From contig OZ059900.1 in assembly GCA_964057225.1 (NCBI GenBank), positions 9,052,001 to 9,116,000 of the forward strand: a stretch of 64,000 bases of DNA, written 5' to 3'. This document shows positions 24,901 through 44,800 of the stretch, piece after piece. The notes beneath the pieces are model-generated. The model saw nothing but the letters and a program-made list of their open reading frames with translations, did not search any database and was not told where the DNA came from. Source of the DNA: Auanema rhodensis (taxonomy: Eukaryota; Animalia; Nematoda). How positions within the stretch are numbered: position 1 is the stretch's first letter; each line of letters starts with the position of its first letter. Position numbers and translations under genes: made by a program.

Positions 24901-27900
24901 CTGTTACTTGTGATTCTATATAGATCTCTCTTTCTGTTTAATCATTTTCAGTATTGAATTGAATTGTTTCGAAAATTTTTATTTCTCTTGAAATTTCAAT
25001 CGATATCATCTCTTCCCTATACATGTTGTTTTGATAATCATTATGGAATTGTCTATAGTTTTTCCTTTTACTTGTGATTCTATATAGATCTCTCTTTCTG
25101 TTTAATCATTTTCAGTATTGAATTGAATTGTTTCGAAAATTTTTATTTCTCTTGAAATTTCAATCGATATCATCTCTTCCCTATACATGTTGTTTTGATA
25201 ATCAATATGGAATTGTCTATAGTTTCGACTGTTACTTGTGATTCTATATAGATCTCTCTTTCTGTTTAATCATTTTCAGTATTGAATTGAATTGTTTCGA
25301 AAATTTTTATTTCTCTTGAAATTTCAATCGATATCATCTCTTCCCTATACATGTTGTTTTGATAATCAATATGGAATTGTCTATAGTTTCGACTGTTACT
25401 TGTGATTCTATATAGATCTCTCTTTCTGTTTAATCATTTTCAGTATTGAATTGAATTGTTTCGAAAATTTTTATTTCTCTTGAAATTTCAATCGATATCA
25501 TCTTTTACCTATACATGTTGTTTTGAAAATCAATATGGAATTGTCTATAGTTTCGACTGTTACTTGTGATTCTATATAGATCTCTCTTTCTGTTTAATCA
25601 TTTTCAGTATTGAATTGAATTGTTTCGAAAATTTTTATTTCTCTTGAAATTTCAATCGATATCATCTTTTACCTATACATGTTGTTTTGAAAATCAATAT
25701 GGAATTGTCTATAGTTTCGACTGTTACTTGTGATTCTATATAGATCTCTCTTTCTGTTTAATCATTTTCAGTATTGAATTGAATTGTTTCGAAAATTTTT
25801 ATTTCTCTTGAAATTTCAATCGATATCATCTTTTACCTATACATGTTGTTTTGAAAATCAATATGGAATTGTCTATAGTTTCGACTGTTACTTGTGATTC
25901 TATATAGATCTCTCTTTCTGTTTAATCATTTTCAGTATTGAATTGAATTGTTTCGAAAATTTTTATTTCTCTTGAAATTTCAATCGATATCATCTTTTAC
26001 CTATACATGTTGTTTTGAAAATCAATATGGAATTGTCTATAGTTTCGACTGTTACTTGTGATTCTATATAGATCTCTCTTTCTGTTTAATCATTTTCAGT
26101 ATTGAATTGAATTGTTTCGAAAATTTTTATTTCTCTTGAAATTTCAATCGATATCATCTTTTACCTATACATGTTGTTTTGAAAATCAATATGGAATTGT
26201 CTATAGTTTCGACTGTTACTTGTGATTCTATATAGATCTCTCTTTCTGTTTAATCATTTTCAGTATTGAATTGAATTGTTTCGAAAATTTTTATTTCTCT
26301 TGAAATTTCAATCGATATCATCTTTTACCTATACATGTTGTTTTGAAAATCAATATGGAATTGTCTATAGTTTCGACTGTTACTTGTGATTCTATATAGA
26401 TCTCTCTTTCTGTTTAATCATTTTCAGTATTGAATTGAATTGTTTCGAAAATTTTTATTTCTCTTGAAATTTCAATCGATATCATCTTTTACCTATACAT
26501 GTTGTTTTGAAAATCAATATGGAATTGTCTATAGTTTCGACTGTTACTTGTGATTCTATATAGATCTCTCTTTCTGTTTAATCATTTTCAGTATTGAATT
26601 GAATTGTTTCGAAAATTTTTATTTCTCTTGAAATTTCAATCGATATCATCTCTTTCCTATACATGTTGTTTTGAAAATCAATATGGAATTGTCTATAGTT
26701 TCGACTGTTACTTGTGATTCTATATAGATCTCTCTTTCTGTTTAATCATTTTCAGTATTGAATTGAATTGTTTCGAAAATTTTTATTTCTCTTGAAATTT
26801 CAATCGATATCATCTCTTCCCTATACATGTTGTTTTGATAATCATTATGGAATTGTCTATAGTTTTTCCTTTTACTTGTGATTCTATATAGATCTCTCTT
26901 TCTGTTTAATCATTTTCAGTATTGAATTGAATTGTTTCGAAAATTTTTATTTCTCTTGAAATTTCAATCGATATCATCTCTTTCCTATACATGTTGTTTT
27001 GATAATCAATATGGAATTGTCTATAGTTTCGACTGTTACTTGTGATTCTATATAGATCTCTCTTTCTGTTTAATCATTTTCAGTATTGAATTGAATTGTT
27101 TCGAAAATTTTTATTTCTCTTGAAATTTCAATCGATATCATCTCTTCCCTATACATGTTGTTTTGATAATCATTATGGAATTGTCTATAGTTTTTCCTTT
27201 TACTTGTGATTCTATATAGATCTCTCTTTCTGTTTAATCATTTTCAGTATTGAATTGAATTGTTTCGAAAATTTTTATTTCTCTTGAAATTTCAATCGAT
27301 ATCATCTCTTCCCTATACATGTTGTTTTGATAATCAATATGGAATTGTCTATAGTTTCGACTGTTACTTGTGATTCTATATAGATCTCTCTTTCTGTTTA
27401 ATCATTTTCAGTATTGAATTGAATTGTTTCGAAAATTTTTATTTCTCTTGAAATTTCAATCGATATCATCTCTTCCCTATACATGTTGTTTTGATAATCA
27501 TTATGGAATTGTCTATAGTTTTTCCTTTTACTTGTGATTCTATATAGATCTCTCTTTCTGTTTAATCATTTTCAGTATTGAATTGAATTGTTTCGAAAAT
27601 TTTTATTTCTCTTGAAATTTCAATCGATATCATCTCTTCCCTATACATGTTGTTTTGATAATCAATATGGAATTGTCTATAGTTTCGACTGTTACTTGTG
27701 ATTCTATATAGATCTCTCTTTCTGTTTAATCATTTTCAGTATTGAATTGAATTGTTTCGAAAATTTTTATTTCTCTTGAAATTTCAATCGATATCATCTC
27801 TTCCCTATACATGTTGTTTTGATAATCAATATGGAATTGTCTATAGTTTCGACTGTTACTTGTGATTCTATATAGATCTCTCTTTCTGTTTAATCATTTT

Positions 27901-30900
27901 CAGTATTGAATTGAATTGTTTCGAAAATTTTTATTTCTCTTGAAATTTCAATCGATATCATCTTTTACCTATACATGTTGTTTTGAAAATCAATATGGAA
28001 TTGTCTATAGTTTCGACTGTTACTTGTGATTCTATATAGATCTCTCTTTCTGTTTAATCATTTTCAGTATTGAATTGAATTGTTTCGAAAATTTTTATTT
28101 CTCTTGAAATTTCAATCGATATCATCTCTTCCCTATACATGTTGTTTTGATAATCAATATGGAATTGTCTATAGTTTCGACTGTTACTTGTGATTCTATA
28201 TAGATCTCTCTTTCTGTTTAATCATTTTCAGTATTGAATTGAATTGTTTCGAAAATTTTTATTTCTCTTGAAATTTCAATCGATATCATCTCTTCCCTAT
28301 ACATGTTGTTTTGATAATCAATATGGAATTGTCTATAGTTTCGACTGTTACTTGTGATTCTATATAGATCTCTCTTTCTGTTTAATCATTTTCAGTATTG
28401 AATTGAATTGTTTCGAAAATTTTTATTTCTCTTGAAATTTCAATCGATATCATCTCTTCCCTATACATGTTGTTTTGATAATCAATGTGGAATTGTCTAT
28501 AGTTTTGACTGTTACTTGTGATTCTATATAGATCTCTCTTTCTGTTTAATCATTTTCAGTATTGAATTGAATTGTTTCGAAAATTTTTATTTCTCTTGAA
28601 ATTTCAATCGATATCATCTCTTCCCTATACATGTTGTTTTGATAATCAATATGGAATTGTCTATAGTTTTGACTGTTACTTGTGATTCTATATAGATCTC
28701 TCTTTCTGTTTAATCATTTTCAGTATTGAATTGAATTGTTTCGAAAATTTTTATTTCTCTTGAAATTTCAATCGATATCATCTCTTCCCTATACATGTTG
28801 TTTTGATAATCAATATGGAATTGTCTATAGTTTTGACTGTTACTTGTGATTCTATATAGATCTCTCTTTCTGTTTAATCATTTTCAGTATTGAATTGAAT
28901 TGTTTCGAAAATTTTTATTTCTCTTGAAATTTCAATCGATATCATCTCTTCCCTATACATGTTGTTTTGATAATCAATATGGAATTGTCTATAGTTTCGA
29001 CTGTTACTTGTGATTCTATATAGATCTCTCTTTCTGTTTAATCATTTTCAGTATTGAATTGAATTGTTTCGAAAATTTTTATTTCTCTTGAAATTTCAAT
29101 CGATATCATCTCTTCCCTATACATGTTGTTTTGATAATCAATATGGAATTGTCTATAGTTTCGACTGTTACTTGTGATTCTATATAGATCTCTCTTTCTG
29201 TTTAATCATTTTCAGTATTGAATTGAATTGTTTCGAAAATTTTTATTTCTCTTGAAATTTCAATCGATATCATCTCTTCCCTATACATGTTGTTTTGATA
29301 ATCAATATGGAATTGTCTATAGTTTCGACTGTTACTTGTGATTCTATATAGATCTCTCTTTCTGTTTAATCATTTTCAGTATTGAATTGAATTGTTTCGA
29401 AAATTTTTATTTCTCTTGAAATTTCAATCGATATCATCTCTTCCCTATACATGTTGTTTTGATAATCAATATGGAATTGTCTATAGTTTCGACTGTTACT
29501 TGTGATTCTATATAGATCTCTCTTTCTGTTTAATCATTTTCAGTATTGAATTGAATTGTTTCGAAAATTTTTATTTCTCTTGAAATTTCAATCGATATCA
29601 TCTCTTCCCTATACATGTTGTTTTGATAATCAATATGGAATTGTCTATAGTTTCGACTGTTACTTGTGATTCTATATAGATCTCTCTTTCTGTTTAATCA
29701 TTTTCAGTATTGAATTGAATTGTTTCGAAAATTTTTATTTCTCTTGAAATTTCAATCGATATCATCTCTTCCCTATACATGTTGTTTTGATAATCAATAT
29801 GGAATTGTCTATAGTTTCGACTGTTACTTGTGATTCTATATAGATCTCTCTTTCTGTTTAATCATTTTCAGTATTGAATTGAATTGTTTCGAAAATTTTT
29901 ATTTCTCTTGAAATTTCAATCGATATCATCTCTTCCCTATACATGTTGTTTTGATAATCAATATGGAATTGTCTATAGTTTCGACTGTTACTTGTGATTC
30001 TATATAGATCTCTCTTTCTGTTTAATCATTTTCAGTATTGAATTGAATTGTTTCGAAAATTTTTATTTCTCTTGAAATTTCAATCGATATCATCTCTTCC
30101 CTATACATGTTGTTTTGATAATCAATATGGAATTGTCTATAGTTTCGACTGTTACTTGTGATTCTATATAGATCTCTCTTTCTGTTTAATCATTTTCAGT
30201 ATTGAATTGAATTGTTTCGAAAATTTTTATTTCTCTTGAAATTTCAATCGATATCATCTCTTCCCTATACATGTTGTTTTGATAATCAATATGGAATTGT
30301 CTATAGTTTCGACTGTTACTTGTGATTCTATATAGATCTCTCTTTCTGTTTAATCATTTTCAGTATTGAATTGAATTGTTTCGAAAATTTTTATTTCTCT
30401 TGAAATTTCAATCGATATCATCTCTTCCCTATACATGTTGTTTTGATAATCAATATGGAATTGTCTATAGTTTTGACTGTTACTTGTGATTCTATATAGA
30501 TCTCTCTTTCTGTTTAATCATTTTCAGTATTGAATTGAATTGTTTCGAAAATTTTTATTTCTCTTGAAATTTCAATCGATATCATCTCTTCCCTATACAT
30601 GTTGTTTTGATAATCAATATGGAATTGTCTATAGTTTCGACTGTTACTTGTGATTCTATATAGATCTCTCTTTCTGTTTAATCATTTTCAGTATTGAATT
30701 GAATTGTTTCGAAAATTTTTATTTCTCTTGAAATTTCAATCGATATCATCTCTTCCCTATACATGTTGTTTTGATAATCAATATGGAATTGTCTATAGTT
30801 TTGACTGTTACTTGTGATTCTATATAGATCTCTCTTTCTGTTTAATCATTTTCAGTATTGAATTGAATTGTTTCGAAAATTTTTATTTCTCTTGAAATTT

Positions 30901-33900
30901 CAATCGATATCATCTCTTCCCTATACATGTTGTTTTGATAATCAATATGGAATTGTCTATAGTTTTGACTGTTACTTGTGATTCTATATAGATCTCTCTT
31001 TCTGTTTAATCATTTTCAGTATTGAATTGAATTGTTTCGAAAATTTTTATTTCTCTTGAAATTTCAATCGATATCATCTCTTCCCTATACATGTTGTTTT
31101 GATAATCAATATGGAATTGTCTATAGTTTTGACTGTTACTTGTGATTCTATATAGATCTCTCTTTCTGTTTAATCATTTTCAGTATTGAATTGAATTGTT
31201 TCGAAAATTTTTATTTCTCTTGAAATTTCAATCGATATCATCTCTTCCCTATACATGTTGTTTTGATAATCAATATGGAATTGTCTATAGTTTTGACTGT
31301 TACTTGTGATTCTATATAGATCTCTCTTTCTGTTTAATCATTTTCAGTATTGAATTGAATTGTTTCGAAAATTTTTATTTCTCTTGAAATTTCAATCGAT
31401 ATCATCTCTTCCCTATACATGTTGTTTTGATAATCAATATGGAATTGTCTATAGTTTCGACTGTTACTTGTGATTCTATATAGATCTCTCTTTCTGTTTA
31501 ATCATTTTCAGTATTGAATTGAATTGTTTCGAAAATTTTTATTTCTCTTGAAATTTCAATCGATATCATCTCTTCCCTATACATGTTGTTTTGATAATCA
31601 ATATGGAATTGTCTATAGTTTCGACTGTTACTTGTGATTCTATATAGATCTCTCTTTCTGTTTAATCATTTTCAGTATTGAATTGAATTGTTTCGAAAAT
31701 TTTTATTTCTCTTGAAATTTCAATCGATATCATCTCTTCCCTATACATGTTGTTTTGATAATCAATATGGAATTGTCTATAGTTTTGACTGTTACTTGTG
31801 ATTCTATATAGATCTCTCTTTCTGTTTAATCATTTTCAGTATTGAATTGAATTGTTTCGAAAATTTTTATTTCTCTTGAAATTTCAATCGATATCATCTC
31901 TTCCCTATACATGTTGTTTTGATAATCAATATGGAATTGTCTATAGTTTCGACTGTTACTTGTGATTCTATATAGATCTCTCTTTCTGTTTAATCATTTT
32001 CAGTATTGAATTGAATTGTTTCGAAAATTTTTATTTCTCTTGAAATTTCAATCGATATCATCTCTTCCCTATACATGTTGTTTTGATAATCAATATGGAA
32101 TTGTCTATAGTTTCGACTGTTACTTGTGATTCTATATAGATCTCTCTTTCTGTTTAATCATTTTCAGTATTGAATTGAATTGTTTCGAAAATTTTTATTT
32201 CTCTTGAAATTTCAATCGATATCATCTCTTCCCTATACATGTTGTTTTGATAATCAATATGGAATTGTCTATAGTTTCGACTGTTACTTGTGATTCTATA
32301 TAGATCTCTCTTTCTGTTTAATCATTTTCAGTATTGAATTGAATTGTTTCGAAAATTTTTATTTCTCTTGAAATTTCAATCGATATCATCTCTTCCCTAT
32401 ACATGTTGTTTTGATAATCAATATGGAATTGTCTATAGTTTCGACTGTTACTTGTGATTCTATATAGATCTCTCTTTCTGTTTAATCATTTTCAGTATTG
32501 AATTGAATTGTTTCGAAAATTTTTATTTCTCTTGAAATTTCAATCGATATCATCTCTTCCCTATACATGTTGTTTTGATAATCATTATGGAATTGTCTAT
32601 AGTTTTGACTGTTACTTGTGATTCTATATAGATCTCTCTTTCTGTTTAATCATTTTCAGTATTGAATTGAATTGTTTCGAAAATTTTTATTTCTCTTGAA
32701 ATTTCAATCGATATCATCTCTTCCCTATACATGTTGTTTTGAAAATCAATATGGAATTGTCTATAGTTTTGACTGTTACTTGTGATTCTATATAGATCTC
32801 TCTTTCTGTTTAATCATTTTCAGTATTGAATTGAATTGTTTCGAAAATTTTTATTTCTCTTGAAATTTCAATCGATATCATCTCTTCCCTATACATGTTG
32901 TTTTGATAATCAATATGGAATTGTCTATAGTTTCGACTGTTACTTGTGATTCTATATAGATCTCTCTTTCTGTTTAATCATTTTCAGTATTGAATTAAAT
33001 TGTTTCGAAAATTTTTATTTCTCTTGAAATTTCAATCGATATCATCTCTTCCCTATACATGTTGTTTTGATAATCAATATGGAATTGTCTATAGTTTTGA
33101 CTGTTACTTGTGATTCTATATAGATCTCTCTTTCTGTTTAATCATTTTCAGTATTGAATTAAATTGTTTCGAAAATTTTTATTTCTCTTGAAATTTCAAT
33201 CGATATCATCTCTTCCCTATACATGTTGTTTTGATAATCAATATGGAATTGTCTATAGTTTCGACTGTTACTTGTGATTCTATATAGATCTCTCTTTCTG
33301 TTTAATCATTTTCAGTATTGATTTGAATTGTTTCGAAAATTTTTATTTCTCTTGAAATTTCAATCGATATCATCTCTTACCTATACATGTTGTTTTGAAA
33401 ATCAATATGGAATTATCTATAGTTTTGACTGTTACTTGTGATTCTATACAGATCTCTCTTTCTGTTTAATCATTTTCAGTATTGAATTGAATTGTTTCGA
33501 AAATTTTTATTTCTCTTGAAATTTCAATCGATATCATCTCTTCCCTATACATGTTGTTTTGATAATCAATATGGAATTGTCTATAGTTTCGACTGTTACT
33601 TGTGATTCTATATAGATCTCTCTTTCTGTTTAATCATTTTCAGTATTGAATTAAATTGTTTCGAAAATTTTTATTTCTCTTGAAATTTCAATCGATATCA
33701 TCTCTTCCCTATACATGTTGTTTTGATAATCAATATGGAATTGTCTATAGTTTCGACTGTTACTTGTGATTCTATATAGATCTCTCTTTCTGTTTAATCA
33801 TTTTCAGTATTGAATTGAATTGTTTCGAAAATTTTTATTTCTCTTGAAATTTCAATCGATATCATCTCTTACCTATACATGTTGTTTTGAAAATCAATAT

Positions 33901-36900
33901 GGAATTATCTATAGTTTTGACTGTTACTTGTGATTCTATATAGATCTCTCTTTCTGTTTAATCATTTTCAGTATTGAATTGAATTGTTTCGAAAATTTTT
34001 ATTTCTCTTGAAATTTCAATCGATATCATCTCTTACCTATACATGTTGTTTTGAAAATCAATATGGAATTATCTATAGTTTTGACTGTTACTTGTGATTC
34101 TATATAGATCTCTCTTTCTGTTTAATCATTTTCAGTATTGAATTGAATTGTTTCGAAAATTTTTATTTCTCTTGAAATTTCAATCGATATCATCTCTTAC
34201 CTATACATGTTGTTTTGAAAATCAATATGGAATTATCTATAGTTTTGACTGTTACTTGTGATTCTATATAGATCTCTCTTTCTGTTTAATCATTTTCAGT
34301 ATTGAATTGAATTGTTTCGAAAATTTTTATTTCTCTTGAAATTTCAATCGATATCATCTCTTACCTATACATGTTGTTTTGAAAATCAATATGGAATTAT
34401 CTATAGTTTTTACTTTTACTTGTGATTCTATATAGATCTCTCTTTCTGTTTAATCATTTTCAGTATTGAATTGAATTGTTTCGAAAATTTTTATTTCTCT
34501 TGAAATTTCAATCGATATCATCTCTTACCTATACATGTTGTTTTGAAAATCAATATGGAATTATCTATAGTTTTTACTTTTACTTGTGATTCTATATAGA
34601 TCTCTCTTTCTGTTTAATCATTTTCAGTATTGAATTGAATTGTTTCGAAAATTTTTATTTCTCTTGAAATTTCAATCGATATCATCTCTTACCTATACAT
34701 GTTGTTTTGAAAATCAATATGGAATTATCTATAGTTTTGACTGTTACTTGTGATTCTATATAGATCTCTCTTTCTGTTTAATCATTTTCAGTATTGAATT
34801 GAATTGTTTCGAAAATTTTTATTTCTCTTGAAATTTCAATCGATATCATCTCTTACCTATACATGTTGTTTTGAAAATCAATATGGAATTATCTATAGTT
34901 TTGACTGTTACTTGTGATTCTATATAGATCTCTCTTTCTGTTTAATCATTTTCAGTATTGAATTGAATTGTTTCGAAAATTTTTATTTCTCTTGAAATTT
35001 CAATCGATATCATCTCTTACCTATACATGTTGTTTTGAAAATCAATATGGAATTATCTATAGTTTTGACTGTTACTTGTGATTCTATACAGATCTCTCTT
35101 TCTGTTTAATCATTTTCAGTATTGAATTGAATTGTTTCGAAAATTTTTATTTCTCTTGAAATTTCAATCGATATCATCTCTTACCTATACATGTTGTTTT
35201 GAAAATCAATATGGAATTATCTATAGTTTTGACTGTTACTTGTGATTCTATATAGATCTCTCTTTCTGTTTAATCATTTTCAGTATTGAATTGAATTGTT
35301 TCGAAAATTTTTATTTCTCTTGAAATTTCAATCGATATCATCTCTTACCTATACATGTTGTTTTGAAAATCAATATGGAATTATCTATAGTTTTGACTGT
35401 TACTTGTGATTCTATACAGATCTCTCTTTCTGTTTAATCATTTTCAGTATTGAATTGAATTGTTTCGAAAATTTTTATTTCTCTTGAAATTTCAATCGAT
35501 ATCATCTCTTACCTATACATGTTGTTTTGAAAATCAATATGGAATTATCTATAGTTTTGACTGTTACTTGTGATTCTATATAGATCTCTCTTTCTGTTTA
35601 ATCATTTTCAGTATTGAATTGAATTGTTTCGAAAATTTTTATTTCTCTTGAAATTTCAATCGATATCATCTCTTACCTATACATGTTGTTTTGAAAATCA
35701 ATATGGAATTATCTATAGTTTTGACTGTTACTTGTGATTCTATACAGATCTCTCTTTCTGTTTAATCATTTTCAGTATTGAATTGAATTGTTTCGAAAAT
35801 TTTTATTTCTCTTGAAATTTCAATCGATATCATCTCTTACCTATACATGTTGTTTTGAAAATCAATATGGAATTATCTATAGTTTTGACTATTACTTGTG
35901 ATTCTATACAGATCTCTCTTTCTGTTTAATCATTTTCAGTATTGAATTGAATTGTTTCGAAAATTTTTATTTCTCTTGAAATTTCAATCGATATCATCTC
36001 TTACCTATACATGTTGTTTTGAAAATCAATATGGAATTATCTATAGTTTTGACTGTTACTTGTGATTCTATACAGATCTCTCTTTCTGTTTAATCATTTT
36101 CAGTATTGAATTGAATTGTTTCGAAAATTTTTATTTCTCTTGAAATTTCAATCGATATCATCTCTTACCTATACATGTTGTTTTGAAAATCAATATGGAA
36201 TTATCTATAGTTTTGACTGTTACTTGTGATTCTATATAGATCTCTCTTTCTGTTTAATCATTTTCAGTATTGAATTGAATTGTTTCGAAAATTTTTATTT
36301 CTCTTGAAATTTCAATCGATATCATCTCTTACCTATACATGTTGTTTTGAAAATCAATATGGAATTATCTATAGTTTTGACTGTTACTTGTGATTCTATA
36401 TAGATCTCTCTTTCTGTTTAATCATTTTCAGTATTGAATTGAATTGTTTCGAAAATTTTTATTTCTCTTGAAATTTCAATCGATATCATCTCTTACCTAT
36501 ACATGTTGTTTTGAAAATTTTTATTTCTCTTGAAATTTCAATCGATATCATCTCTTACCTATACATGTTGTTTTGAAAATCAATATGGAATTATCTATAG
36601 TTTTGACTGTTACTTGTGATTCTATACAGATCTCTCTTTCTGTTTAATCATTTTCAGTATTGAATTGAATTGTTTCGAAAATTTTTATTTCTCTTGAAAT
36701 TTCAATCGATATCATCTCTTACCTATACATGTTGTTTTGAAAATCAATATGGAATTATCTATAGTTTTGACTATTACTTGTGATTCTATACAGATCTCTC
36801 TTTCTGTTTAATCATTTTCAGTATTGAATTGAATTGTTTCGAAAATTTTTATTTCTCTTGAAATTTCAATCGATATCATCTCTTACCTATACATGTTGTT

Positions 36901-38588
36901 TTGAAAATCAATATGGAATTATCTATAGTTTTGACTATTACTTGTGATTCTATACAGATCTCTCTTTCTGTTTAATCATTTTCAGTATTGAATTGAATTG
37001 TTTCGAAAATTTTTATTTCTCTTGAAATTTCAATCGATATCATCTCTTACCTATACATGTTGTTTTGAAAATCAATATGGAATTATCTATAGTTTTGACT
37101 GTTACTTGTGATTCTATACAGATCTCTCTTTCTGTTTAATCATTTTCAGTATTGAATTGAATTGTTTCGAAAATTTTTATTTCTCTTGAAATTTCAATCG
37201 ATATCATCTCTTACCTATACATGTTGTTTTGAAAATCAATATGGAATTATCTATAGTTTTGACTGTTACTTGTGATTCTATATAGATCTCTCTTTCTGTT
37301 TAATCATTTTCAGTATTGAATTGAATTGTTTCGAAAATTTTTATTTCTCTTGAAATTTCAATCGATATCATCTCTTACCTATACATGTTGTTTTGAAAAT
37401 CAATATGGAATTATCTATAGTTTTGACTGTTACTTGTGATTCTATATAGATCTCTCTTTCTGTTTAATCATTTTCAGTATTGAATTGAATTGTTTCGAAA
37501 ATTTTTATTTCTCTTGAAATTTCAATCGATATCATCTCTTACCTATACATGTTGTTTTGAAAATCAATATGGAATTATCTATAGTTTTGACTGTTACTTG
37601 TGATTCTATATAGATCTCTCTTTCTGTTTAATCATTTTCAGTATTGAATTGAATTGTTTCGAAAATTTTTATTTCTCTTGAAATTTCAATCGATATCATC
37701 TCTTACCTATACATGTTGTTTTGAAAATCAATATGGAATTATCTATAGTTTTGACTGTTACTTGTGATTCTATATAGATCTCTCTTTCTGTTTAATCATT
37801 TTCAGTATTGAATTGAATTGTTTCGAAAATTTTTATTTCTCTTGAAATTTCAATCGATATCATCTCTTACCTATACATGTTGTTTTGAAAATCAATATGG
37901 AATTATCTATAGTTTTGACTGTTACTTGTGATTCTATATAGATCTCTCTTTCTGTTTAATCATTTTCAGTATTGAATTGAATTGTTTCGAAAATTTTTAT
38001 TTCTCTTGAAATTTCAATCGATATCATCTCTTACCTATACATGTTGTTTTGAAAATCAATATGGAATTATCTATAGTTTTGACTGTTACTTGTGATTCTA
38101 TATAGATCTCTCTTTCTGTTTAATCATTTTCAGTATTGATTTGAATTGTTTCGAAAATTTTTATTTCTCTTGAAATTTCAATCGATATCATCTCTTACCT
38201 ATACATGTTGTTTTGAAAATCAATATGGAATTATCTATAGTTTTGACTGTTACTTGTGATTCTATACAGATCTCTCTTTCTGTTTAATCATTTTCAGTAT
38301 TGATTTGAATTGTTTCGAAAATTTTTATTTCTCTTGAAATTTCAATCGATATCATCTCTTACCTATACATGTTGTTTTGAAAATCAATATGGAATTATCT
38401 ATAGTTTTGACTGTTACTTGTGATTCTATACAGATCTCTCTTTCTGTTTAATCATTTTCAGTATTGAATTGAATTGTTTCGAAAATTTTTATTTCTCTTG
38501 AAATTTCAATCGATATCATCTCTTCCCTATACATGTTGTTTTGATAATCAATATGGAATTGTCTATAGTTTTAACTGTTACTTGTGAT
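901..38588 (+). repeat. 164-bp tandem satellite, left array (~230 monomers)
   Basis: Representative monomer: gaattgaattgtttcgaaaatttttatttctcttgaaatttcaatcgatatcatctcttccctatacatgttgttttgaaaatcaatatggaattgtctatagttttgactgttacttgtgattctatatagatctctctttctgtttaatcattttcagtatt. The tcg of ttcgaa is in exact 164 phase: 942 to 8978 (49 units), 9061 to 36449 (167 units), 36675 to 38479 (11 units). There is one 83-bp unit and one 226-bp unit. Confidence 0.99.
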
Positions 38589-39110
38589 CGATTGAAATTT
38601 CGAGAAAAATAAAAATTTTCGAAACAATTCATTTCAATACTGAAGATGATTAAACAGAAAGAGAGATCTATAGAGAATCACAAGTAACAGTCGGAACTAT
38701 AAACATTTCCATATTGATTATCAAAACAACATGTATAGGGAAGAGATGATATCGATTGAAATTTCAAGAGAAATAAAAATTTTCGAAACAATTCAATTCA
38801 ATACTGAAAATGATTAAACAGAAAGAGAGATCTATAGAGAATTACAAGTAACAGTCAAAACTATAGACAATTCCATATTGATTATCAAAACAACATGTAT
38901 AGGTAAAAGATGATATCGATTGAAATTTCAAGAGAAATAAAAATTTTCGAAACAATTCAATTCAATACTGAAAATGATTAAACAGAAAGAGAGATCTATA
39001 GAGAATTACAAGTAACAGTCAAAACTATAGATAATTCCATATTGATTTTCAAAACAACATCTATAGGGAAGAGATGATATCGATTGAAATTTCAACAAAA
39101 ATTAAAATTT
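38587..39110 (-). repeat. Inverted block of the same 164-bp satellite (~3.2 monomers)
   Basis: Reverse-complement monomers (gatatcgattgaaatttcaagagaaataaaaattttcgaaacaattcaattcaatactg...). The orientation switches at gtgAT|cgattg with a 2-bp AT overlap. Confidence 0.98.
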
Positions 39111-39314
39111 GATTTGATTTGATAAATTTGAAAGAAAAGTATGTGTTGTCTTTACTTTTATTTAATTTTTTATTGTTTCAATCTCATTCTTTTCATGAGC
39201 GCCATTAAAATTAACAAAGATATCGTTTTAAAAGAAGACAATGTTCATCTAAAATAATCTTGTTGTCTGTCCTCGATTGTGACAACAGAAGACTTACACT
39301 TTCCATCTAGATTT

Positions 39315-39344
39315 GGGTCGGCCGGGTCGCGAGCGAATAAATAG
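39315..39344 (+). promoter_or_regulatory. Candidate core promoter of gene A: GC-rich GGGTCG-gcc-GGGTCG followed by TATA-like ATAAATAG
   Basis: The most GC/CpG-rich non-coding patch in the cassette, ~180-205 bp upstream of the ATG. A polypyrimidine acceptor (ttttatttttttag, AG at 39433-39434) lies between it and the ATG and may be a 5'UTR intron or trans-splice acceptor. Confidence 0.35.
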
Positions 39345-39521
39345 CTCGATCGAATGCCACCTTCTCTCTTTTTTTCCTTCCTGTATTTCGATTTGGTGGC
39401 TGTTTCCTAGTAACCACACCTTTTATTTTTTTAGATTGGAATTAAGATCGATCATAATAAAAATTGTTCATATTCCTAGCGAAGAAGCATTTAAATACGC
39501 TAAAATTGTCCCGGCGAATAT

Positions 39522-40290
39522 ATGAAGAAAATACTCGCCATTTATCTCTACCTTGTGAACCATTTACATGCAGGTATTATAGTTAGATTATATAGTTTCA
39601 TAAATGAAAAGGTCATGTTTTGGCTGAAATTTGTTTTTTTCAGGCAGCACCAACGATGCTACTTACTTCTCTACATCAACGGCTTCTTCGCTAGACAGCT
39701 CTATTTCGTCTGTAGAAGCGACCGCTCCATCTTCAGCCTTCGACATGAACGAACAGTTGGCAAAGATAGCTAACATCTGCCTGACCCGTTCCGAGCACGA
39801 GCAGCTGACGGGTGGCCTTCTTCGATACAGGATAGCGCGACCGTTTAATTTTGTTTTGATAAACGAAGCGCAAGCTGTCATTGGTCTTGAAGAGCTACGT
39901 GCTGTGTTAGGCTTTGCCCCACCCGGAAATTGGACATACTATAAGGAACCCACGAGAGAGGAAATCGCAGCCGCCCTCAATATCGAGGAGTACTACGAGC
40001 TGATGGAACCGCGCAGTACCTGGCGTAGCCTCAATAGCACGTATTTCTTTGAAAAAAACTTCCCTCCCGCCATAGCGTTCTTAGACATTCGAATCCCAGA
40101 AATTCGTACCATTTATCGACATAAATTTGAAGAAATCCATCGTCGTCATGATCCAAAAGGGATAACAGACAAGAAAGAGGTTGATAGCATGATTGACAGT
40201 TTTAAACCCACATGGGAAAGAATCAGCAAAGCAATTGATAATATCTATTATGTAAATCATGGATGCCTGAATAACAACGGATTGCCTTAA
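39522..40290 (+). CDS. Gene A: two-exon gene, join(39522..39573,39644..40290), 232-aa putative secreted protein of unrecognised family
   Basis: Exon 1 encodes MKKILAIYLYLVNHLHA plus G, ending CAG|GTATTA. Exon 2 follows TTTTTTTCAG|. The phase-1 junction G|GC (Gly) joins in frame to STNDATYF...NGLP*. The N-terminus is signal-peptide-like, exon 2 is visibly more GC-rich than the flanks, AATAAA lies downstream, and the frame is preserved in the diverged twin copy. Confidence 0.85.
39574..39643 (+). other. 70-nt GT-AG intron of gene A
   Basis: gtattat...gtttttttcag; AT-rich; removing it fuses ORF 39522.. with ORF 39631..40290 in frame. Confidence 0.82.
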
Positions 40291-40356
40291 CATTGATAAT
40301 ATATTGTTATATGCATAATACATTGTATATTGTTTACTAGTGTATTGTAAATCGGA

Positions 40357-40362
40357 AATAAA
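40357..40362 (+). terminator. AATAAA polyadenylation signal of gene A
   Basis: Canonical hexamer 66 bp after the TAA stop, followed by T-rich sequence. Confidence 0.6.
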
Positions 40363-40410
40363 TGCTTTTAACGAATTTTTATTTCTACACGCATTAATGT
40401 CAAAACTGAA

Positions 40411-40478
40411 TATAGAGAATCACACGAAACAGTCAAAACTATAAACAATTCCATATTGATTTTCAAAGCAACATGTAT
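40411..40478 (-). repeat. Degenerate 68-bp fragment of the 164-bp satellite inside the palindrome spacer
   Basis: tatagagaatcacacgaaacagtcaaaactataaacaattccatattgattttcaaagcaacatgtat matches the reverse complement of monomer positions ~64-131 with about 4 mismatches. Confidence 0.93.
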
Positions 40479-40585
40479 CTCTTGCAAGTAATTAGCTCAC
40501 AAGGAATGACTTGCCCCATATGTTACTTTGACTCAATTTCAGTTTTGACATTAATGCGTGTAGAAATAAAAATTCGTTAAAAGCA

Positions 40586-40591
40586 TTTATT
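40586..40591 (-). terminator. AATAAA polyadenylation signal of gene B
   Basis: TTTATT on the + strand, the exact mirror of 40357-40362. Confidence 0.6.
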
Positions 40592-40651
40592 TCCGATTTA
40601 CAATACACTAGTAAACAATATACAATGTATTATGCATATAACAATATCTTA

Positions 40652-41426
40652 TCAATAGTAAGGCAATCCCTTCTTTTTCGGGCAATCATAATGTTGAAGA
40701 AAGATATTATCAGTTGCTTCCTCGATACTGTCATAAGTGGTTTCAAAACGGTCAATCATGCGATCAACATGTTTTCTGTCTGTTTTCCCTTTTGGATCAT
40801 GACGACGATGGATTTCTTCAAATTTATGTCGATAAATGGTACGAATTTCTGGGATTCGAATGTCCAAGAACGCTATGGCGGGAGGGAAGTTTTTTTCAAA
40901 GAAATACGTGCTATTAAGGCTACGCTTGATATTGCGTGGTTCCATCAGCTCGTAGTACTCCTCGATATTGAGGGCGGCTGCGATTTCCTCTCTCGTGGGT
41001 TTCTTATAGTATGTCCAATTTCCGGGTGGGGCAAAGCCTAACACAGCACGTAGCTCTTCAAGACCAATGACAGCTTGCGCTTCGTTCATCAAACCATTAT
41101 TAAACATTCGCGCCATCCCGTATCGAAAAATGCTACCCGCCAGCTGCTCGTGTTCGGGAATGGTCAGGCAGATGTTAGCTATCTTTGCCAACTGTTCGTC
41201 CATGTCGAAGGCTGAAGATGGAGCGGTCGCTTCTACAGACGAAATAGAGCTGTCTAGCGAAGAAGCCGTTGATGTAGAGAAGTAAGTAGCATCGTTGGTG
41301 CTGCCTGAAAAAAACAAATTTCAGCCAAAACATGACCTTTTCATTTATGAAACTATATAATCTAACTATAATACCTGCATGTAAATGGTTCACAAGGTAC
41401 AGATAAATGGCGAGTATTTTCTTCAT
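40652..41426 (-). CDS. Gene B: two-exon paralog of gene A, complement(join(40652..41304,41375..41426)), 234-aa putative secreted protein
   Basis: Mirror of gene A with the same exon-1 peptide and an identical intron. It differs by 40 amino acids plus a 2-residue extension (TAA to TAC, ending GLPYY*). No frameshift or premature stop. Confidence 0.85.
41305..41374 (-). other. 70-nt GT-AG intron of gene B
   Basis: Exact reverse complement of 39574-39643. Confidence 0.82.
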
Positions 41427-41603
41427 ATATTCGCCGGGACAATTTTAGCGTATTTAAATGCTTCTTCGCTAGGAATATGAACAATTTTTATTATGATCGA
41501 TCTTAATTCCAATCTAAAAAAATAAAAGGTGTGGTTACTAGGAAACAGCCACCAAATCGAAATACAGGAAGGAAAAAAAGAGAGAAGGTGGCATTCGATC
41601 GAG

Positions 41604-41633
41604 CTATTTATTCGCTCGCGACCCGGCCGACCC
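41604..41633 (-). promoter_or_regulatory. Candidate core promoter of gene B (mirror of 39315-39344)
   Basis: ctatttattcgctcgcgacccggccgaccc, an identical reverse complement. Confidence 0.35.
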
Positions 41634-41837
41634 AAATCTAGATGGAAAGTGTAAGTCTTCTGTTGTCACAATCGAGGACAGACAACAAGATTATTTTAGA
41701 TGAACATTGTCTTCTTTTAAAACGATATCTTTGTTAATTTTAATGGCGCTCATGAAAAGAATGAGATTGAAACAATAAAAAATTAAATAAAAGTAAAGAC
41801 AACACATACTTTTCTTTCAAATTTATCAAATCAAATC

Positions 41838-44800
41838 AAATTTTAATTTTTGTTGAAATTTCAATCGATATCATCTCTTCCCTATAGATGTTGTTTTGAA
41901 AATCAATATGGAATTATCTATAGTTTTGACTGTTACTTGTAATTCTCTATAGATCTCTCTTTCTGTTTAATCATTTTCAGTATTGAATTGAATTGTTTCG
42001 AAAATTTTTATTTCTCTTGAAATTTCAATCGATATCATCTTTTACCTATACATGTTGTTTTGATAATCAATATGGAATTGTCTATAGTTTTGACTGTTAC
42101 TTGTAATTCTCTATAGATCTCTCTTTCTGTTTAATCATTTTCAGTATTGAATTGAATTGTTTCGAAAATTTTAATTTTTGTTGAAATTTCAATCGATATC
42201 ATCTCTTCCCTATAGATGTTGTTTTGAAAATCAATATGGAATTATCTATAGTTTTGACTGTTACTTGTAATTCTCTATAGATCTCTCTTTCTGTTTAATC
42301 ATTTTCAGTATTGAATTGAATTGTTTCGAAAATTTTAATTTTTGTTGAAATTTCAATCGATATCATCTCTTCCCTATAGATGTTGTTTTGAAAATCAATA
42401 TGGAATTATCTATAGTTTTGACTGTTACTTGTAATTCTCTATAGATCTCTCTTTCTGTTTAATCATTTTCAGTATTGAATTGAATTGTTTCGAAAATTTT
42501 AATTTTTGTTGAAATTTCAATCGATATCATCTCTTCCCTATAGATGTTGTTTTGAAAATCAATATGGAATTATCTATAGTTTTGACTGTTACTTGTAATT
42601 CTCTATAGATCTCTCTTTCTGTTTAATCATTTTCAGTATTGAATTGAATTGTTTCGAAAATTTTAATTTTTGTTGAAATTTCAATCGATATCATCTCTTC
42701 CCTATAGATGTTGTTTTGAAAATCAATATGGAATTATCTATAGTTTTGACTGTTACTTGTGATTCTATATAGATATTTCCTTCTCTTTAATCATCTTCAT
42801 TATTGAATTGAATTGTTTCGAAAATTTTAATTTTTGTTGGAATTTCAATCGATATCATCTTTTCCCTATACATGTTGTTTTGAAAATCAATATGGAATTA
42901 TCTATAGTTTTGACTGTTACTTGTGATTCTATATAGATATTTCCTTCTCTTTAATCATCTTCATTATTGAATTGAATTGTTTCGAAAATTTTAATTTTTG
43001 TTGGAATTTCAATCGATATCATCTTTTCCCTATACATGTTGTTTTGAAAATCAATATGGAATTATCTATAGTTTTGACTGTTACTTGTGATTCTATATAG
43101 ATATTTCCTTCTCTTTAATCATCTTCATTATTGAATTGAATTGTTTCGAAAATTTTAATTTTTGTTGGAATTTCAATCGATATCATCTTTTCCCTATACA
43201 TGTTGTTTTGAAAATCAATATGGAATTATCTATAGTTTTGACTGTTACTTGTGATTCTATATAGATATTTCCTTCTCTTTAATCATCTTCATTATTGAAT
43301 TGAATTGTTTCGAAAATTTTAATTTTTGTTGAAATTTCAATCGATATCATCTTTTCCCTATAGATGTTGTTTTGAAAATCAATATGGAATTATCTCTAGT
43401 TTTCACTGTTACTTGTGATTCTCTATAGATATTTCCTTCTCTCTGATCATCTTCAGTATTTAATTGTATTGTTTCGAAAATTTTTATTTTTGTTGGAATT
43501 TCAATCGATATCATCTTTTCCCTATAGATGTTGTTTTGAAAATCAATATGGAATTATCAATAGTTTTGACTGTTACTTGTGATTCTATATAGATATTTCC
43601 TTCTCTCTGATCATCTTCAGTATTTAATTGAATTGTTTCGAAAATTTTTATTTTTGTTGGAATTTCAATCGATATCATCTTTTCCCTATAGATGTTGTTT
43701 TGAAAATCAATATGGAATTATCTCTAGTTTTCACTGTTACTTGTGATTCTCTATAGATATTTCCTTCTCTCTGATCATCTTCAGTATTTAATTGTATTGT
43801 TTCGAAAATTTTTATTTTTGTTGGAATTTCAATCGATATCATCTTTTCCCTATACATGTTGTTTTGAAAATCAATATGGAATTATCAATAGTTTTGACTG
43901 TTACTTGTGATTCTATATAGATATTTCCTTCTCTTTAATCATCTTCATTATTGAATTGAATTGTTTCGAAAATTTTAATTTTTGTTGGAATTTCAATCGA
44001 TATCATCTTTTCCCTATACATGTTGTTTTGAAAATCAATATGGAATTATCTATAGTTTTGACTGTTACTTGTGATTCTATATAGATATTTCCTTCTCTTT
44101 AATCATCTTCATTATTGAATTGAATTGTTTCGAAAATTTTAATTTTTGTTGGAATTTCGATCGATATCATCTTTTCCCTATACATGTTGTTTTGAAAATC
44201 AATATGGAATTATCTATAGTTTTGACTGTTACTTGTGATTCTATATAGATATTTCCTTCTCTTTAATCATCTTCATTATTGAATTGAATTGTTTCGAAAA
44301 TTTTAATTTTTGTTGGAATTTCAATCGATATCATCTTTTCCCTATACATGTTGTTTTGAAAATCAATATGGAATTATCAATAGTTTTGACTGTTACTTGT
44401 GATTCTATATAGATATTTCCTTCTCTTTAATCATCTTCATTATTGAATTGAATTGTTTCGAAAATTTTAATTTTTGTTGGAATTTCGATCGATATCATCT
44501 TTTCCCTATACATGTTGTTTTGAAAATCAATATGGAATTATCTATAGTTTTGACTGTTACTTGTGATTCTATATAGATATTTCCTTCTCTTTAATCATCT
44601 TCATTATTGAATTGAATTGTTTCGAAAATTTTAATTTTTGTTGGAATTTCAATCGATATCATCTTTTCCCTATACATGTTGTTTTGAAAATCAATATGGA
44701 ATTATCAATAGTTTTGACTGTTACTTGTGATTCTATATAGATATTTCCTTCTCTTTAATCATCTTCATTATTGAATTGAATTGTTTCGAAAATTTTAATT

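What the first reader, a model, noticed from the sequence alone, without database searches (positions are those of the whole stretch)
39748..40300. Extreme excess of amino-acid-changing differences between arms that are identical in non-coding DNA
Codon-by-codon hand comparison gives 40 amino-acid-changing codons plus a stop-to-Tyr change, against 6 purely synonymous codons (CTC/CTG in exon 1, GAG/GAA, CCG/CCA, CTC/CTT, TTA/TTG, ACA/ACT). There are zero differences in the 70-nt intron, in the 746 bp upstream and in the last 110 bp of the arm. Many changes are radical or multi-hit (CGT/ATT, CCG/ATG, TTT/AAT, TGG/AAG, AGC/GAG, NNN to KKK). Neutral divergence after duplication would spread changes into the intron and flanks, so this points to diversifying selection, with or without conversion that is resisted at these codons.
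Basis: seen in the sequence. Interest (0 to 1): 0.85.

Follow-up and report, generated by a model that had tools for sequence, protein, structure and literature searches.

The report
Diverging gene twins in a palindrome
Two mirror-image copies of a secreted-protein gene in a nematode satellite array are identical in all flanking and intron DNA but differ at 40 amino acids in three patches; this is the known footprint of copy-correction (gene conversion) opposed by selection for different proteins, unusually clean here, in a gene family that also seems to have moved between nematode genera.

Summary
The true arms are 38776-40410 and 40538-42172 (1,635 nt, no indels). They differ at 61 positions, all between 39548 and 40300. 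There are 40 amino-acid-changing codons, 6 synonymous codons and a stop/Tyr change. There are no differences in 926 nt of upstream, intron and 3' DNA.

Both copies are intact. Each is single-copy in three DNA studies, and both are spliced and transcribed. The pairwise ML dN/dS is 2.5 for the whole gene (p=0.02) and 3.6 in the three patches (p=0.004, patches chosen post hoc).

Synonymous sites inside the patches (dS about 0.12) are far more diverged than non-coding DNA (p about 4e-7). A recent duplication followed only by positive selection therefore cannot explain the pattern. The best reading is arm-to-arm gene conversion that homogenises everything except patches where amino-acid divergence is favoured, a "peak of divergence". 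That is a known kind of pattern.

The protein is secreted and all-helical, with no Pfam or PDB match. It belongs to a nematode family of about 188 clusters.

Unexpectedly, the gene with its UTRs is 80-82% identical in DNA to a Caenorhabditis remanei locus. If the genome is Auanema rhodense, as earlier notes of this scan state, family members are mosaics shared between Auanema and Caenorhabditis at dS 0.15-0.25, which suggests horizontal transfer.

The scan had already noted this locus on the same DNA.

The parts
38776..40410 (+). Arm A of the palindrome: 335 nt of satellite, then the 1,300-nt unique gene unit.
   Evidence: It is 100% identical to its mirror over 38776-39547, while the next-best satellite match is 97.6%. 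The outer 189 nt (38587-38775) match other monomers better than the mirror does.
40538..42172 (-). Arm B of the palindrome (mirror coordinate = 80948 - x).
40411..40537 (.). 127-nt spacer. 40411-40478 is a satellite-like piece in the inverted orientation. 40479-40537 is unique DNA that continues gene B's 3' flank and is homologous to the C. remanei flank.
39522..39573 (+). Gene A exon 1 (signal peptide). It has one synonymous difference, at 39548.
   Evidence: The intron-less junction is seen in RNA-like run X10.
39574..39643 (+). Gene A intron, 70 nt, GT..AG, with 0 differences between the arms.
   Evidence: the joints 39641/41378 and 39574/41303 are the spliced form.
39644..40290 (+). Gene A exon 2 up to the stop codon TAA (40288-40290). 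The protein is 232 aa.
40652..41304 (-). Gene B exon 2 up to the stop codon TGA (40652-40654). The protein is 234 aa, the same length as the C. remanei homolog.
41375..41426 (-). Gene B exon 1.
39748..39861 (+). Patch 1 (codons 53-92; mirror 41087-41200). It has 17 nt differences, 16 non-synonymous and 1 synonymous, and covers short helices and the start of the long helix 79-106.
   Evidence: (omega about 8, p=0.015).
40011..40032 (+). Patch 2 (codons 140-147; mirror 40916-40937). It has 6 nt differences and lies in a loop between helices.
40163..40300 (+). Patch 3 (codons 191-232 and tail; mirror 40648-40785). It has 35 nt differences (25%) and covers the C-terminal long helix 194-220 and the end of the protein, including the stop/Tyr change.
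40301..40410 (+). Identical 3'UTR and downstream DNA. AATAAA lies at 40357-40362. RNA contigs stop before about 40385. The region is 91% identical to C. remanei.
904..38775 (.). 164-bp satellite (492-bp higher-order period) flanking the island on the left. The same array resumes at 42173-64000.

Best explanation
A 1,635-bp palindrome carries two convergent, intact, transcribed copies of a small secreted helical protein gene.

Inferred: the two arms are kept identical by frequent arm-to-arm (intrachromosomal) gene conversion, as in other inverted paralogs.

Shown: three coding patches escape this homogenisation. There the copies have accumulated amino-acid changes faster than synonymous ones, on both copies.

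Inferred mechanism:
- Conversion tracts that would overwrite a patch are removed by selection, because the two proteins are favoured to differ on parts of their surface.
- Once a patch is 15-28% diverged, heteroduplex rejection also blocks conversion.
- Synonymous differences inside the patches are dragged along. This is why the patches look 'old' (dS about 0.12, like the roughly 10% divergence of a third, unlinked copy) while the intron, promoter and UTR look newborn.

The same patches are the fast-evolving parts of the whole family, and the core between them is under purifying selection.
For: - 0/926 non-coding differences against 61/709 in the CDS plus tail, with no indels.
- Synonymous divergence is far above non-coding divergence: 5/52 sites in the patches against 0/926, p=3.5e-7.
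- Omega is 2.46 for the whole gene (p=0.019) and 3.57 in the patches (p=0.004). Against C. remanei, the blocks give omega 0.36-0.43.
- Derived states split 28 in A and 18 in B, randomly interleaved: 24 runs against 22.9 expected.
- The identical blocks between patches are 149 and 130 nt, within the usual 50-200 nt conversion tracts of Caenorhabditis paralogs. Conversion into introns and between inverted neighbours is documented there (PMC3966223).
- A 'peak of divergence' with low-divergence flanks is the predicted signature of selection under gene conversion (PMC3924837).
- A-specific and B-specific patch contigs are each at 1x depth and shared parts at 2x in three DNA studies, so no identical donor exists elsewhere in the genome.
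- Both copies are present, and the intron is removed, in RNA-like runs.
- A third copy is 85-90% identical and differs in the intron and upstream as well. This shows what unlinked paralogs look like without homogenisation.
Against: - No conversion event was observed directly. There are only two sequences and no population or sister-species data.
- In C. remanei the homologous gene also sits in an inverted repeat, with arms 100% identical including the patches. Inverted duplications at this locus may therefore simply be very young, which would make the window's patch divergence hard to place in time.
- The family is strongly mosaic, so module import is plausible.
- The patch boundaries were chosen after seeing the data.
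- 12 of 46 changed codons carry multiple hits, and codon models can overestimate omega when multi-nucleotide changes occur.
- A helical-wheel test for surface exposure of the variable residues was not significant (p=0.10 and 0.43).
Confidence: 0.55

Rival explanations
1. Module import. The palindrome is very young and began with identical arms. One or both copies then received the three patches by ectopic conversion or recombination from other, diverged family members or from an incoming mobile copy. The pattern would then reflect mosaicism rather than in-place divergence.
For: Family members are clear mosaics. The C. remanei gene shares its 5' part with A. melissensis locus L002 (86-98% identical) and its core and 3' part with L004 (87-97%), while L002 and L004 share the Ser/Thr-rich segment. 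dS is 0.15-0.2 inside shared modules and above 1 outside them. One module boundary falls inside patch 1. The C. remanei palindrome is 100% identical.
Against: A and B are each other's closest known relatives in every patch: A-B identity is 85, 73 and 72%, against 61-82% to C. remanei. Both patch versions are at single-copy depth, so no identical donor survives in the genome. The third copy has an indel where patch 1 lies and a gap in patch 3. Derived states are interleaved base by base between A and B. Three separate short tracts would each have to coincide with a hypervariable region and spare the intron and the blocks.
Confidence: 0.2
2. Captured alleles. Two alleles of a single-copy gene, kept different at the patches by balancing selection and otherwise homogenised by ordinary recombination, were joined into one haplotype by an inverted duplication or template switch between homologues.
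For: This gives the same footprint: peaks at the selected sites and identical flanks. The genome is rich in fold-back palindromes according to earlier notes. The inverted duplication includes 335 nt of satellite, so it looks like a single structural event.
Against: Divergence drops from 15-28% to 0 within tens of bases. Allelic recombination is unlikely to produce so sharp a drop. There is no polymorphism in the runs examined, so it could not be tested.
Confidence: 0.12
3. Recent duplication followed only by very strong positive selection, or by a local burst of mutation, with no homogenisation.
For: dN/dS is above 1. Non-coding DNA is identical.
Against: The upper 95% bound on neutral divergence from 0/926 is 0.32%. 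That predicts fewer than 0.5 synonymous differences, but about 7.7 are seen (p about 9e-7). No targeted mutator is known in nematodes.
Confidence: 0.05
4. One copy is decaying (relaxed constraint), or the pattern is an assembly artefact.
For: A has lost the last two codons relative to B and to C. remanei. The locus lies in a satellite, which is hard to assemble.
Against: Both reading frames are open, with no indels. Omega is significantly above 1 rather than about 1. Changes lie on both copies. Both are transcribed at similar contig depth. Both versions are recovered with 0 mismatches from short-read contigs of three independent DNA studies at 1:1:2 depth.
Confidence: 0.04

Closest known systems
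Peaks of divergence in paralogs under gene conversion (human red/green opsin exon 5, RHD/RHCE; Innan 2003, Teshima and Innan 2008; reviewed in PMC3924837)
   Same: Paralogs are nearly identical in introns and flanks, with sharp local peaks of divergence at the amino-acid sites that selection keeps different. Linked synonymous sites are also elevated.
   Different: Here the copies form a 1.6-kb palindrome only 127 nt apart. There are three peaks with 15-28% divergence against literally zero outside. Whole-gene dN/dS exceeds 1. The function is unknown.
Converting inverted or adjacent paralogs in Caenorhabditis (hsp-16 inverted modules, col-12/13, fog-2/ftr-1; PMC3966223)
   Same: Nematode paralogs in close proximity, including tail-to-tail and head-to-head pairs. 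Conversion extends into introns, and tracts are mostly 50-200 nt.
   Different: Those cases mostly show homogenisation of coding sequence. This pair shows homogenised non-coding DNA with resistant coding patches.
Arm-to-arm gene conversion in sex-chromosome palindromes (PMC3403216)
   Same: Inverted arms are kept almost identical by intrachromosomal conversion, and there are genes in both arms.
   Different: Those arms are kilobases to megabases long and their gene copies are kept identical. Here selection appears to oppose conversion inside the gene.
Accelerated evolution of secreted multigene families with conserved non-coding parts (snake venom PLA2, conotoxins, Hessian fly SSGP genes; recalled from my own knowledge, not re-read here)
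   Same: The signal peptide, UTRs and introns are more conserved between paralogs than the mature-protein codons. The families are large and fast-evolving, and the products are secreted.
   Different: There is no evidence that this protein is a venom or effector. Between species the intron is not conserved (70%), and only the 3'UTR, the upstream element and the core are.
Horizontally transferred Maverick cargo genes in nematodes (WASP proteases, KRMA kinases; bioRxiv 10.1101/2022.07.12.499685)
   Same: Cross-genus near-identity of intron-bearing genes, patchy distribution, and modular (recombinant) gene structure.
   Different: The protein family is different. None of the called neighbour genes has a Pfam annotation typical of Mavericks within 10 kb of the four loci examined. 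The shared unit is only about 1.4-2.5 kb, comprising the gene and a small convergent partner gene.

Membership tests
Paralogs with selection-maintained peaks of divergence under gene conversion | Two paralogous copies exist in one genome | tested here: met
   Inverted repeat. Depth A:B:shared is 1:1:2 in three DNA studies.
Paralogs with selection-maintained peaks of divergence under gene conversion | Neutral flanks and introns are far less diverged than the peak, including linked synonymous sites | tested here: met
   0/926 non-coding differences against dS 0.117 in the patches, p=3.5e-7.
Paralogs with selection-maintained peaks of divergence under gene conversion | Direct evidence of conversion, such as polymorphic tracts or paralogs clustering by species in the flanks but not in the peaks | not testable with these tools
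   There are no other isolates or sister-species pairs. The runs laid show no variation.
Genes under positive or diversifying selection | dN/dS significantly above 1 | tested here: met
   Pairwise GY94 ML gives 2.46 (p=0.019) for the whole gene and 3.57 (p=0.004) for the patches. In patch 3, NG86 omega is 1.5-3.3 in the cross-species pairs.
Genes under positive or diversifying selection | Positively selected sites under site models (M7/M8 or equivalent) on many sequences with recombination accounted for | not tested
   Only about 4-5 alignable subfamily sequences are available, the genes are mosaic, and PAML/HyPhy are not on hand.
Accelerated-evolution secreted families with conserved non-coding parts (PLA2, conotoxin, SSGP type) | Signal peptide, UTRs and introns are more conserved than the mature coding region between family members | tested here: inconclusive
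   Met between A and B. Partly met across species: 3'UTR 91%, an upstream element 94-98%, and patches 61-81%. The intron, however, is only 70% identical.
Maverick-borne horizontally transferred cargo | Cross-genus similarity far above that of neighbouring or housekeeping genes | tested here: met
   On one A. melissensis contig, piki-1 is 38% identical in protein to C. remanei, while the family gene 5 kb away is 85% identical in protein and 84% in DNA, with dS 0.15. Caveat: that segment is bounded by runs of N.
Maverick-borne horizontally transferred cargo | Physical linkage to Maverick core genes (pPolB, integrase, capsid, fusogen) | tested here: not met
   None of the called genes within 10 kb of L001-L004 has a Pfam annotation typical of Mavericks. 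The window itself is pure satellite. No dedicated search for Maverick genes was run.
Two-gene toxin-antidote selfish elements of nematodes | Tightly linked gene pair inherited together | tested here: inconclusive
   A small convergent partner gene lies next to the family gene in L001, L003 and L004, with a remnant in L002. It is absent from the window except for about 22 nt.
Two-gene toxin-antidote selfish elements of nematodes | Maternal or paternal-effect toxicity rescued zygotically | not testable with these tools
   This needs crosses.

The most novel reading that the evidence does not exclude
The pair belongs to a small, horizontally mobile, recombining cassette: a secreted helical protein gene, usually with a small Cys-containing partner gene, often bracketed by or embedded in inverted repeats. 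This cassette moves between Auanema and Caenorhabditis. The palindrome would be an architecture that keeps two functionally distinct versions of a conflict protein (for example a toxin/antidote-like or recognition factor) side by side, while conversion maintains their shared regulatory and structural parts.
Probability: 0.2. Interest if true: 0.85.

Novelty: new member of a known kind. Interest (0 to 1): 0.6.

Why it matters
This is an unusually clean natural example of selection opposing gene conversion. There are zero differences in 926 neutral bases, against up to 28% divergence in 22-138-nt coding patches, and whole-gene dN/dS is above 1. It marks three short protein segments as the likely functional surface of an uncharacterised, fast-evolving secreted nematode family. 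It also offers a tractable pair for swap experiments.

The side result may matter more. Non-coding and synonymous similarity between Auanema and Caenorhabditis copies (dS 0.15-0.25) contrasts with a neighbouring housekeeping gene at 38% protein identity. This points to inter-genus transfer and module shuffling of a gene family not among the known Maverick cargos.

Tried and rejected
- Pfam gave no family for A or for seven relatives.
- The AlphaFold2 model (pLDDT 79, all-helical) has no significant match in the PDB by Foldseek or by VIA-align wide (best Z 5.3, at noise level for helical proteins), and none in BFVD viral structures.
- The ESM Atlas fold search failed three times. The Atlas sequence search gave no usable hit.
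- A helical-wheel test of whether variable residues avoid the hydrophobic face was not significant, so I do not claim surface exposure.
- A fragment search meant to recover the third copy from Logan proteins found only the A. melissensis homolog. An exact look-up of protein A found nothing.
- Rfam found nothing in the conserved upstream element.
- The four published A. rhodense FISH probes (AT-1, XR-1, XT-1, XT-2) do not match the window's 164-bp satellite. I could therefore not place the array among the named repeat families, nor verify the species myself.
- I first took the outer 189 nt of the reported arms to be old, unconverted arm edge. I rejected this because other monomers match them better than the mirror does.
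- My first guess, Hessian-fly-like SSGP genes, was dropped once the homologs proved to be nematode.
- A GC argument against contamination was withdrawn after correcting for N runs.

Full report
**What is there**

The whole 64-kb window is a 164-bp satellite with a 492-bp higher-order period. The only exception is a 2.7-kb unique island at 39111-41837. The island and 335 nt of satellite on each side form a palindrome.

The repeat finder reports arms 38587-40410 and 40538-42361. The outer 189 nt match other monomers better (95.8%) than their mirror (91.5%). From 38776 inward the mirror is the unique best match, at 100% against 97.6% for the next-best monomer. The true arms are therefore 38776-40410 and 40538-42172, 1,635 nt each, with no indel.

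The 127-nt spacer has two parts. The first is 68 nt of satellite-like sequence. The second is 59 nt that continue gene B's 3' flank and are homologous to the flank of the C. remanei gene.

Each arm carries one gene:
- Exon 1 is 52 nt and encodes a signal peptide.
- The intron is 70 nt, GT..AG.
- Exon 2 follows. The genes are convergent.
- A encodes 232 aa and B encodes 234 aa.

**Check of the observation**

The 61 arm differences all lie between 39548 and 40300. There are none in the 746 nt upstream, the intron, or the last 110 nt.

- 40 non-synonymous codons.
- 6 synonymous codons (9, 68, 140, 147, 164, 207).
- TAA in A against TAC in B.

The differences cluster in three patches:
- Patch 1, 39748-39861: 17 differences.
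- Patch 2, 40011-40032: 6 differences.
- Patch 3, 40163-40300: 35 differences, or 25%.

The patches are separated by blocks of 149 and 130 nt that carry one difference each. The contrast with non-coding DNA (p=1.6e-23) and the clustering (p=6e-20) are far beyond chance.

**Is it real DNA, and are both genes alive?**

I laid Logan contigs of four runs on the island. A-specific and B-specific patch contigs occur with 0 mismatches in runs from three DNA studies. Their depth is equal (for example 56.2 and 57.6 in X1), and the shared segments are at about twice that (111.6-143.8). So both versions exist once each, and neither patch version has an identical second copy elsewhere.

A transcriptome-sized run, X10, holds both versions of patches 1 and 3 at similar depth. 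It also holds a contig that joins exon 1 to exon 2 without the intron. Three more runs of the same study hold 87-92% of exon 2's words. RNA contigs end just after the AATAAA at 40357-40362.

The same runs reveal a third copy, 85-90% identical. It differs in the intron and upstream too. It has 51 nt replaced by 13 where patch 1 lies and a gap in patch 3, and it is weakly represented in the RNA-like run.

**Selection tests**

- Nei-Gojobori gives omega 1.87 for the whole gene. By region it is about 5 for codons 53-92, 2.7 for codons 191-229, and 0-0.3 elsewhere.
- A Goldman-Yang pairwise ML model that I coded gives kappa 2.3 and omega 2.46 for the whole gene (LRT against omega=1, p=0.019). It gives 2.9 for codons 53-229 (p=0.009) and 3.57 for the three patches together (p=0.004, patches defined post hoc).
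- Polarising with the C. remanei homolog, 28 differences are derived in A, 18 in B and 12 are unresolved. They are randomly interleaved, with 24 runs against 22.9 expected. Both copies have changed.
- Against C. remanei the blocks between patches are under purifying selection (omega 0.36-0.43), and the patches evolve at omega 1.3-1.8.
- In patch 3, Nei-Gojobori omega is 1.5-3.3 for the three cross-species pairs among C. remanei, A. melissensis L004 and B.
- In the family alignment the patches coincide with the variable columns and the blocks with the conserved ones.

**Why selection alone is not enough**

Zero differences in 926 non-coding bases bound neutral divergence below 0.32%. Yet about 7.7 synonymous differences are present, and dS in the patches is 0.117. 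That is 5 of 52 sites against 0 of 926, p=3.5e-7. The patches are therefore genuinely older than their surroundings.

This is the published signature of selection acting against gene conversion between duplicates, a peak of divergence with homogenised flanks (PMC3924837). Three documented features of Caenorhabditis paralogs fit the geometry here (PMC3966223):
- Conversion tracts are mostly 50-200 nt.
- Conversion extends into introns.
- Conversion occurs between inverted neighbours.

The patch dS is similar to the roughly 10% non-coding divergence of the unlinked third copy. This suggests that the copies arose at about the same time and that only the palindromic pair has been homogenised since. 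That chronology is inference.

**Rivals**

- Import of the patches from other family members is plausible in principle, because the family is mosaic (see "The family and an unexpected result" below). Four points count against it: A and B are each other's nearest relatives in every patch, both patch versions are at single-copy depth, derived states are interleaved, and three short tracts would each have to coincide with a hypervariable region.
- Two balanced alleles captured by an inverted duplication would give the same footprint and cannot be excluded. The drop from 15-28% divergence to 0 within tens of bases fits palindromic conversion better.
- Pseudogene decay and assembly artefact are contradicted by the open frames, omega above 1, expression of both copies and the independent read sets.

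**What the protein is**

It has a signal peptide, a disordered Ser/Thr-rich stretch and a helical domain of about 180 aa. The AlphaFold2 model has mean pLDDT 79 and pTM 0.72. An invariant Cys lies at position 63, and most members have a Cys near the C-terminus.

Patch 1 covers short helices and the start of the long helix 79-106. Patch 2 is a loop. Patch 3 is the long C-terminal helix 194-220 and the tail.

There is no Pfam family and no convincing PDB or viral fold match. A profile search finds 188 clusters at E below 0.001. The named members are all nematode:
- Many in C. remanei, including the run GCK72_008474-84.
- C. brenneri, C. angaria and C. auriculariae.
- Auanema melissensis (strain JU1783).
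- A distant member in Meloidogyne hapla.

No C. elegans protein was among the named members I checked.

**The family and an unexpected result**

Earlier notes of this scan identify this genome as Auanema rhodense. One of them, an mre-11 palindrome at an elimination boundary, matches the species' genome paper. I could not verify the species from this window. The four published FISH probes do not match this satellite.

If the species assignment is right, the gene is remarkably close to a C. remanei locus:
- 80-82% DNA identity over about 1.4 kb.
- 3'UTR 91% identical, and the aligned upstream part 82%.
- dS 0.21-0.25.

Independently, on an A. melissensis contig the piki-1 gene is only 38% identical in protein to C. 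remanei. A family gene 5 kb downstream on the same contig is 85% identical in protein and 84% in DNA, with dS 0.15. An upstream element is 94-98% identical between the genera.

Sliding comparisons show that the genes are mosaics of modules: a 5' region, a Ser/Thr-rich segment, and the core plus C-terminus. dS is 0.15-0.2 inside shared modules and above 1 outside them.

A small convergent partner gene accompanies the family gene in three loci. In one locus the pair is bracketed by inverted repeats of at least 285 nt. In C. remanei the gene lies in a 100%-identical inverted repeat of at least 3,952 nt.

The simplest reading is horizontal transfer and recombination of a small cassette, as described for Maverick cargo genes in nematodes (bioRxiv 10.1101/2022.07.12.499685). 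However, none of the called neighbour genes has a Pfam annotation typical of Mavericks.

Caveats:
- The A. melissensis segments are bounded by N runs.
- The species of the window rests on others' notes.

**Verdict**

It is a new, very clean member of a known kind of pattern, in an uncharacterised secreted family whose apparent inter-genus mobility deserves its own follow-up.

Noticed in passing
window 39111-41837 compared with L001:9453-11106, L002:9281-10940 and L004:28377-30173: The gene unit, including UTRs and upstream DNA, is 76-84% identical in DNA (segments up to 98%) between this genome, C. remanei and Auanema melissensis. dS is 0.15-0.25, while a neighbouring piki-1 is only 38% identical in protein. 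The genes are mosaics of modules. This suggests horizontal transfer and recombination between nematode genera.
   Followed up: partly
L001:10972-11828 (-), L003:11017-11750 (-), L004:29398-30173 (+) and 20619-21643: A small (162-191 aa) Cys-containing gene without a Pfam domain lies next to the family gene in C. remanei and in three A. melissensis places. It is convergent in L001 and L003, and in L004 its segment is inverted relative to the L001 arrangement. Only about 22 nt of it remain in the window. It may be a two-gene cassette.
   Followed up: partly
L001:9718-13669 and 16862-20813; L003:9045-9531 and 11796-12624: The homologous gene in C. remanei sits in a 100%-identical inverted repeat of at least 3,952 nt. 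In A. melissensis the two-gene module is bracketed by inverted repeats of at least 285 nt at 96-100% identity. Inverted repeats recur around this family.
   Followed up: partly
not in the window; contigs of runs X1, X5, X6 and X10 laid on 39458-39768, 40498-40672 and 40793-41490: A third copy is 85-90% identical and differs in the intron and upstream. It has 51 nt replaced by 13 where patch 1 lies and a gap in patch 3, and it has a different 3' flank. Its depth relative to A and B varies between DNA samples (about 1x, 2x and 2.7x). This could reflect sex-linkage or loss of the A/B locus from body cells.
   Followed up: no
window 38587-38588 and 38775-38776; 40411-40478: The satellite flips orientation at 38587/38588. 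The duplicated arm starts only at 38776. The satellite phase jumps by 50 nt across gene unit A: phase 151 before it and phase 100 after it.
   Followed up: partly
window 40282-40410 and 40538-40666: The convergent genes have identical, mutually complementary 3'UTRs 127 nt apart. Read-through from either gene would give a long hairpin RNA. The RNA contigs stop before about 40385, so no read-through was seen.
   Followed up: no
L001:9453-9700, L002:9324-9570, L004:28377-28548: An upstream non-coding element is 94-98% identical between C. remanei and A. melissensis, more conserved than the coding sequence. Thirty nt of it also appear upstream of the third copy in this genome (loose end at 39142). 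It has no Rfam match.
   Followed up: partly
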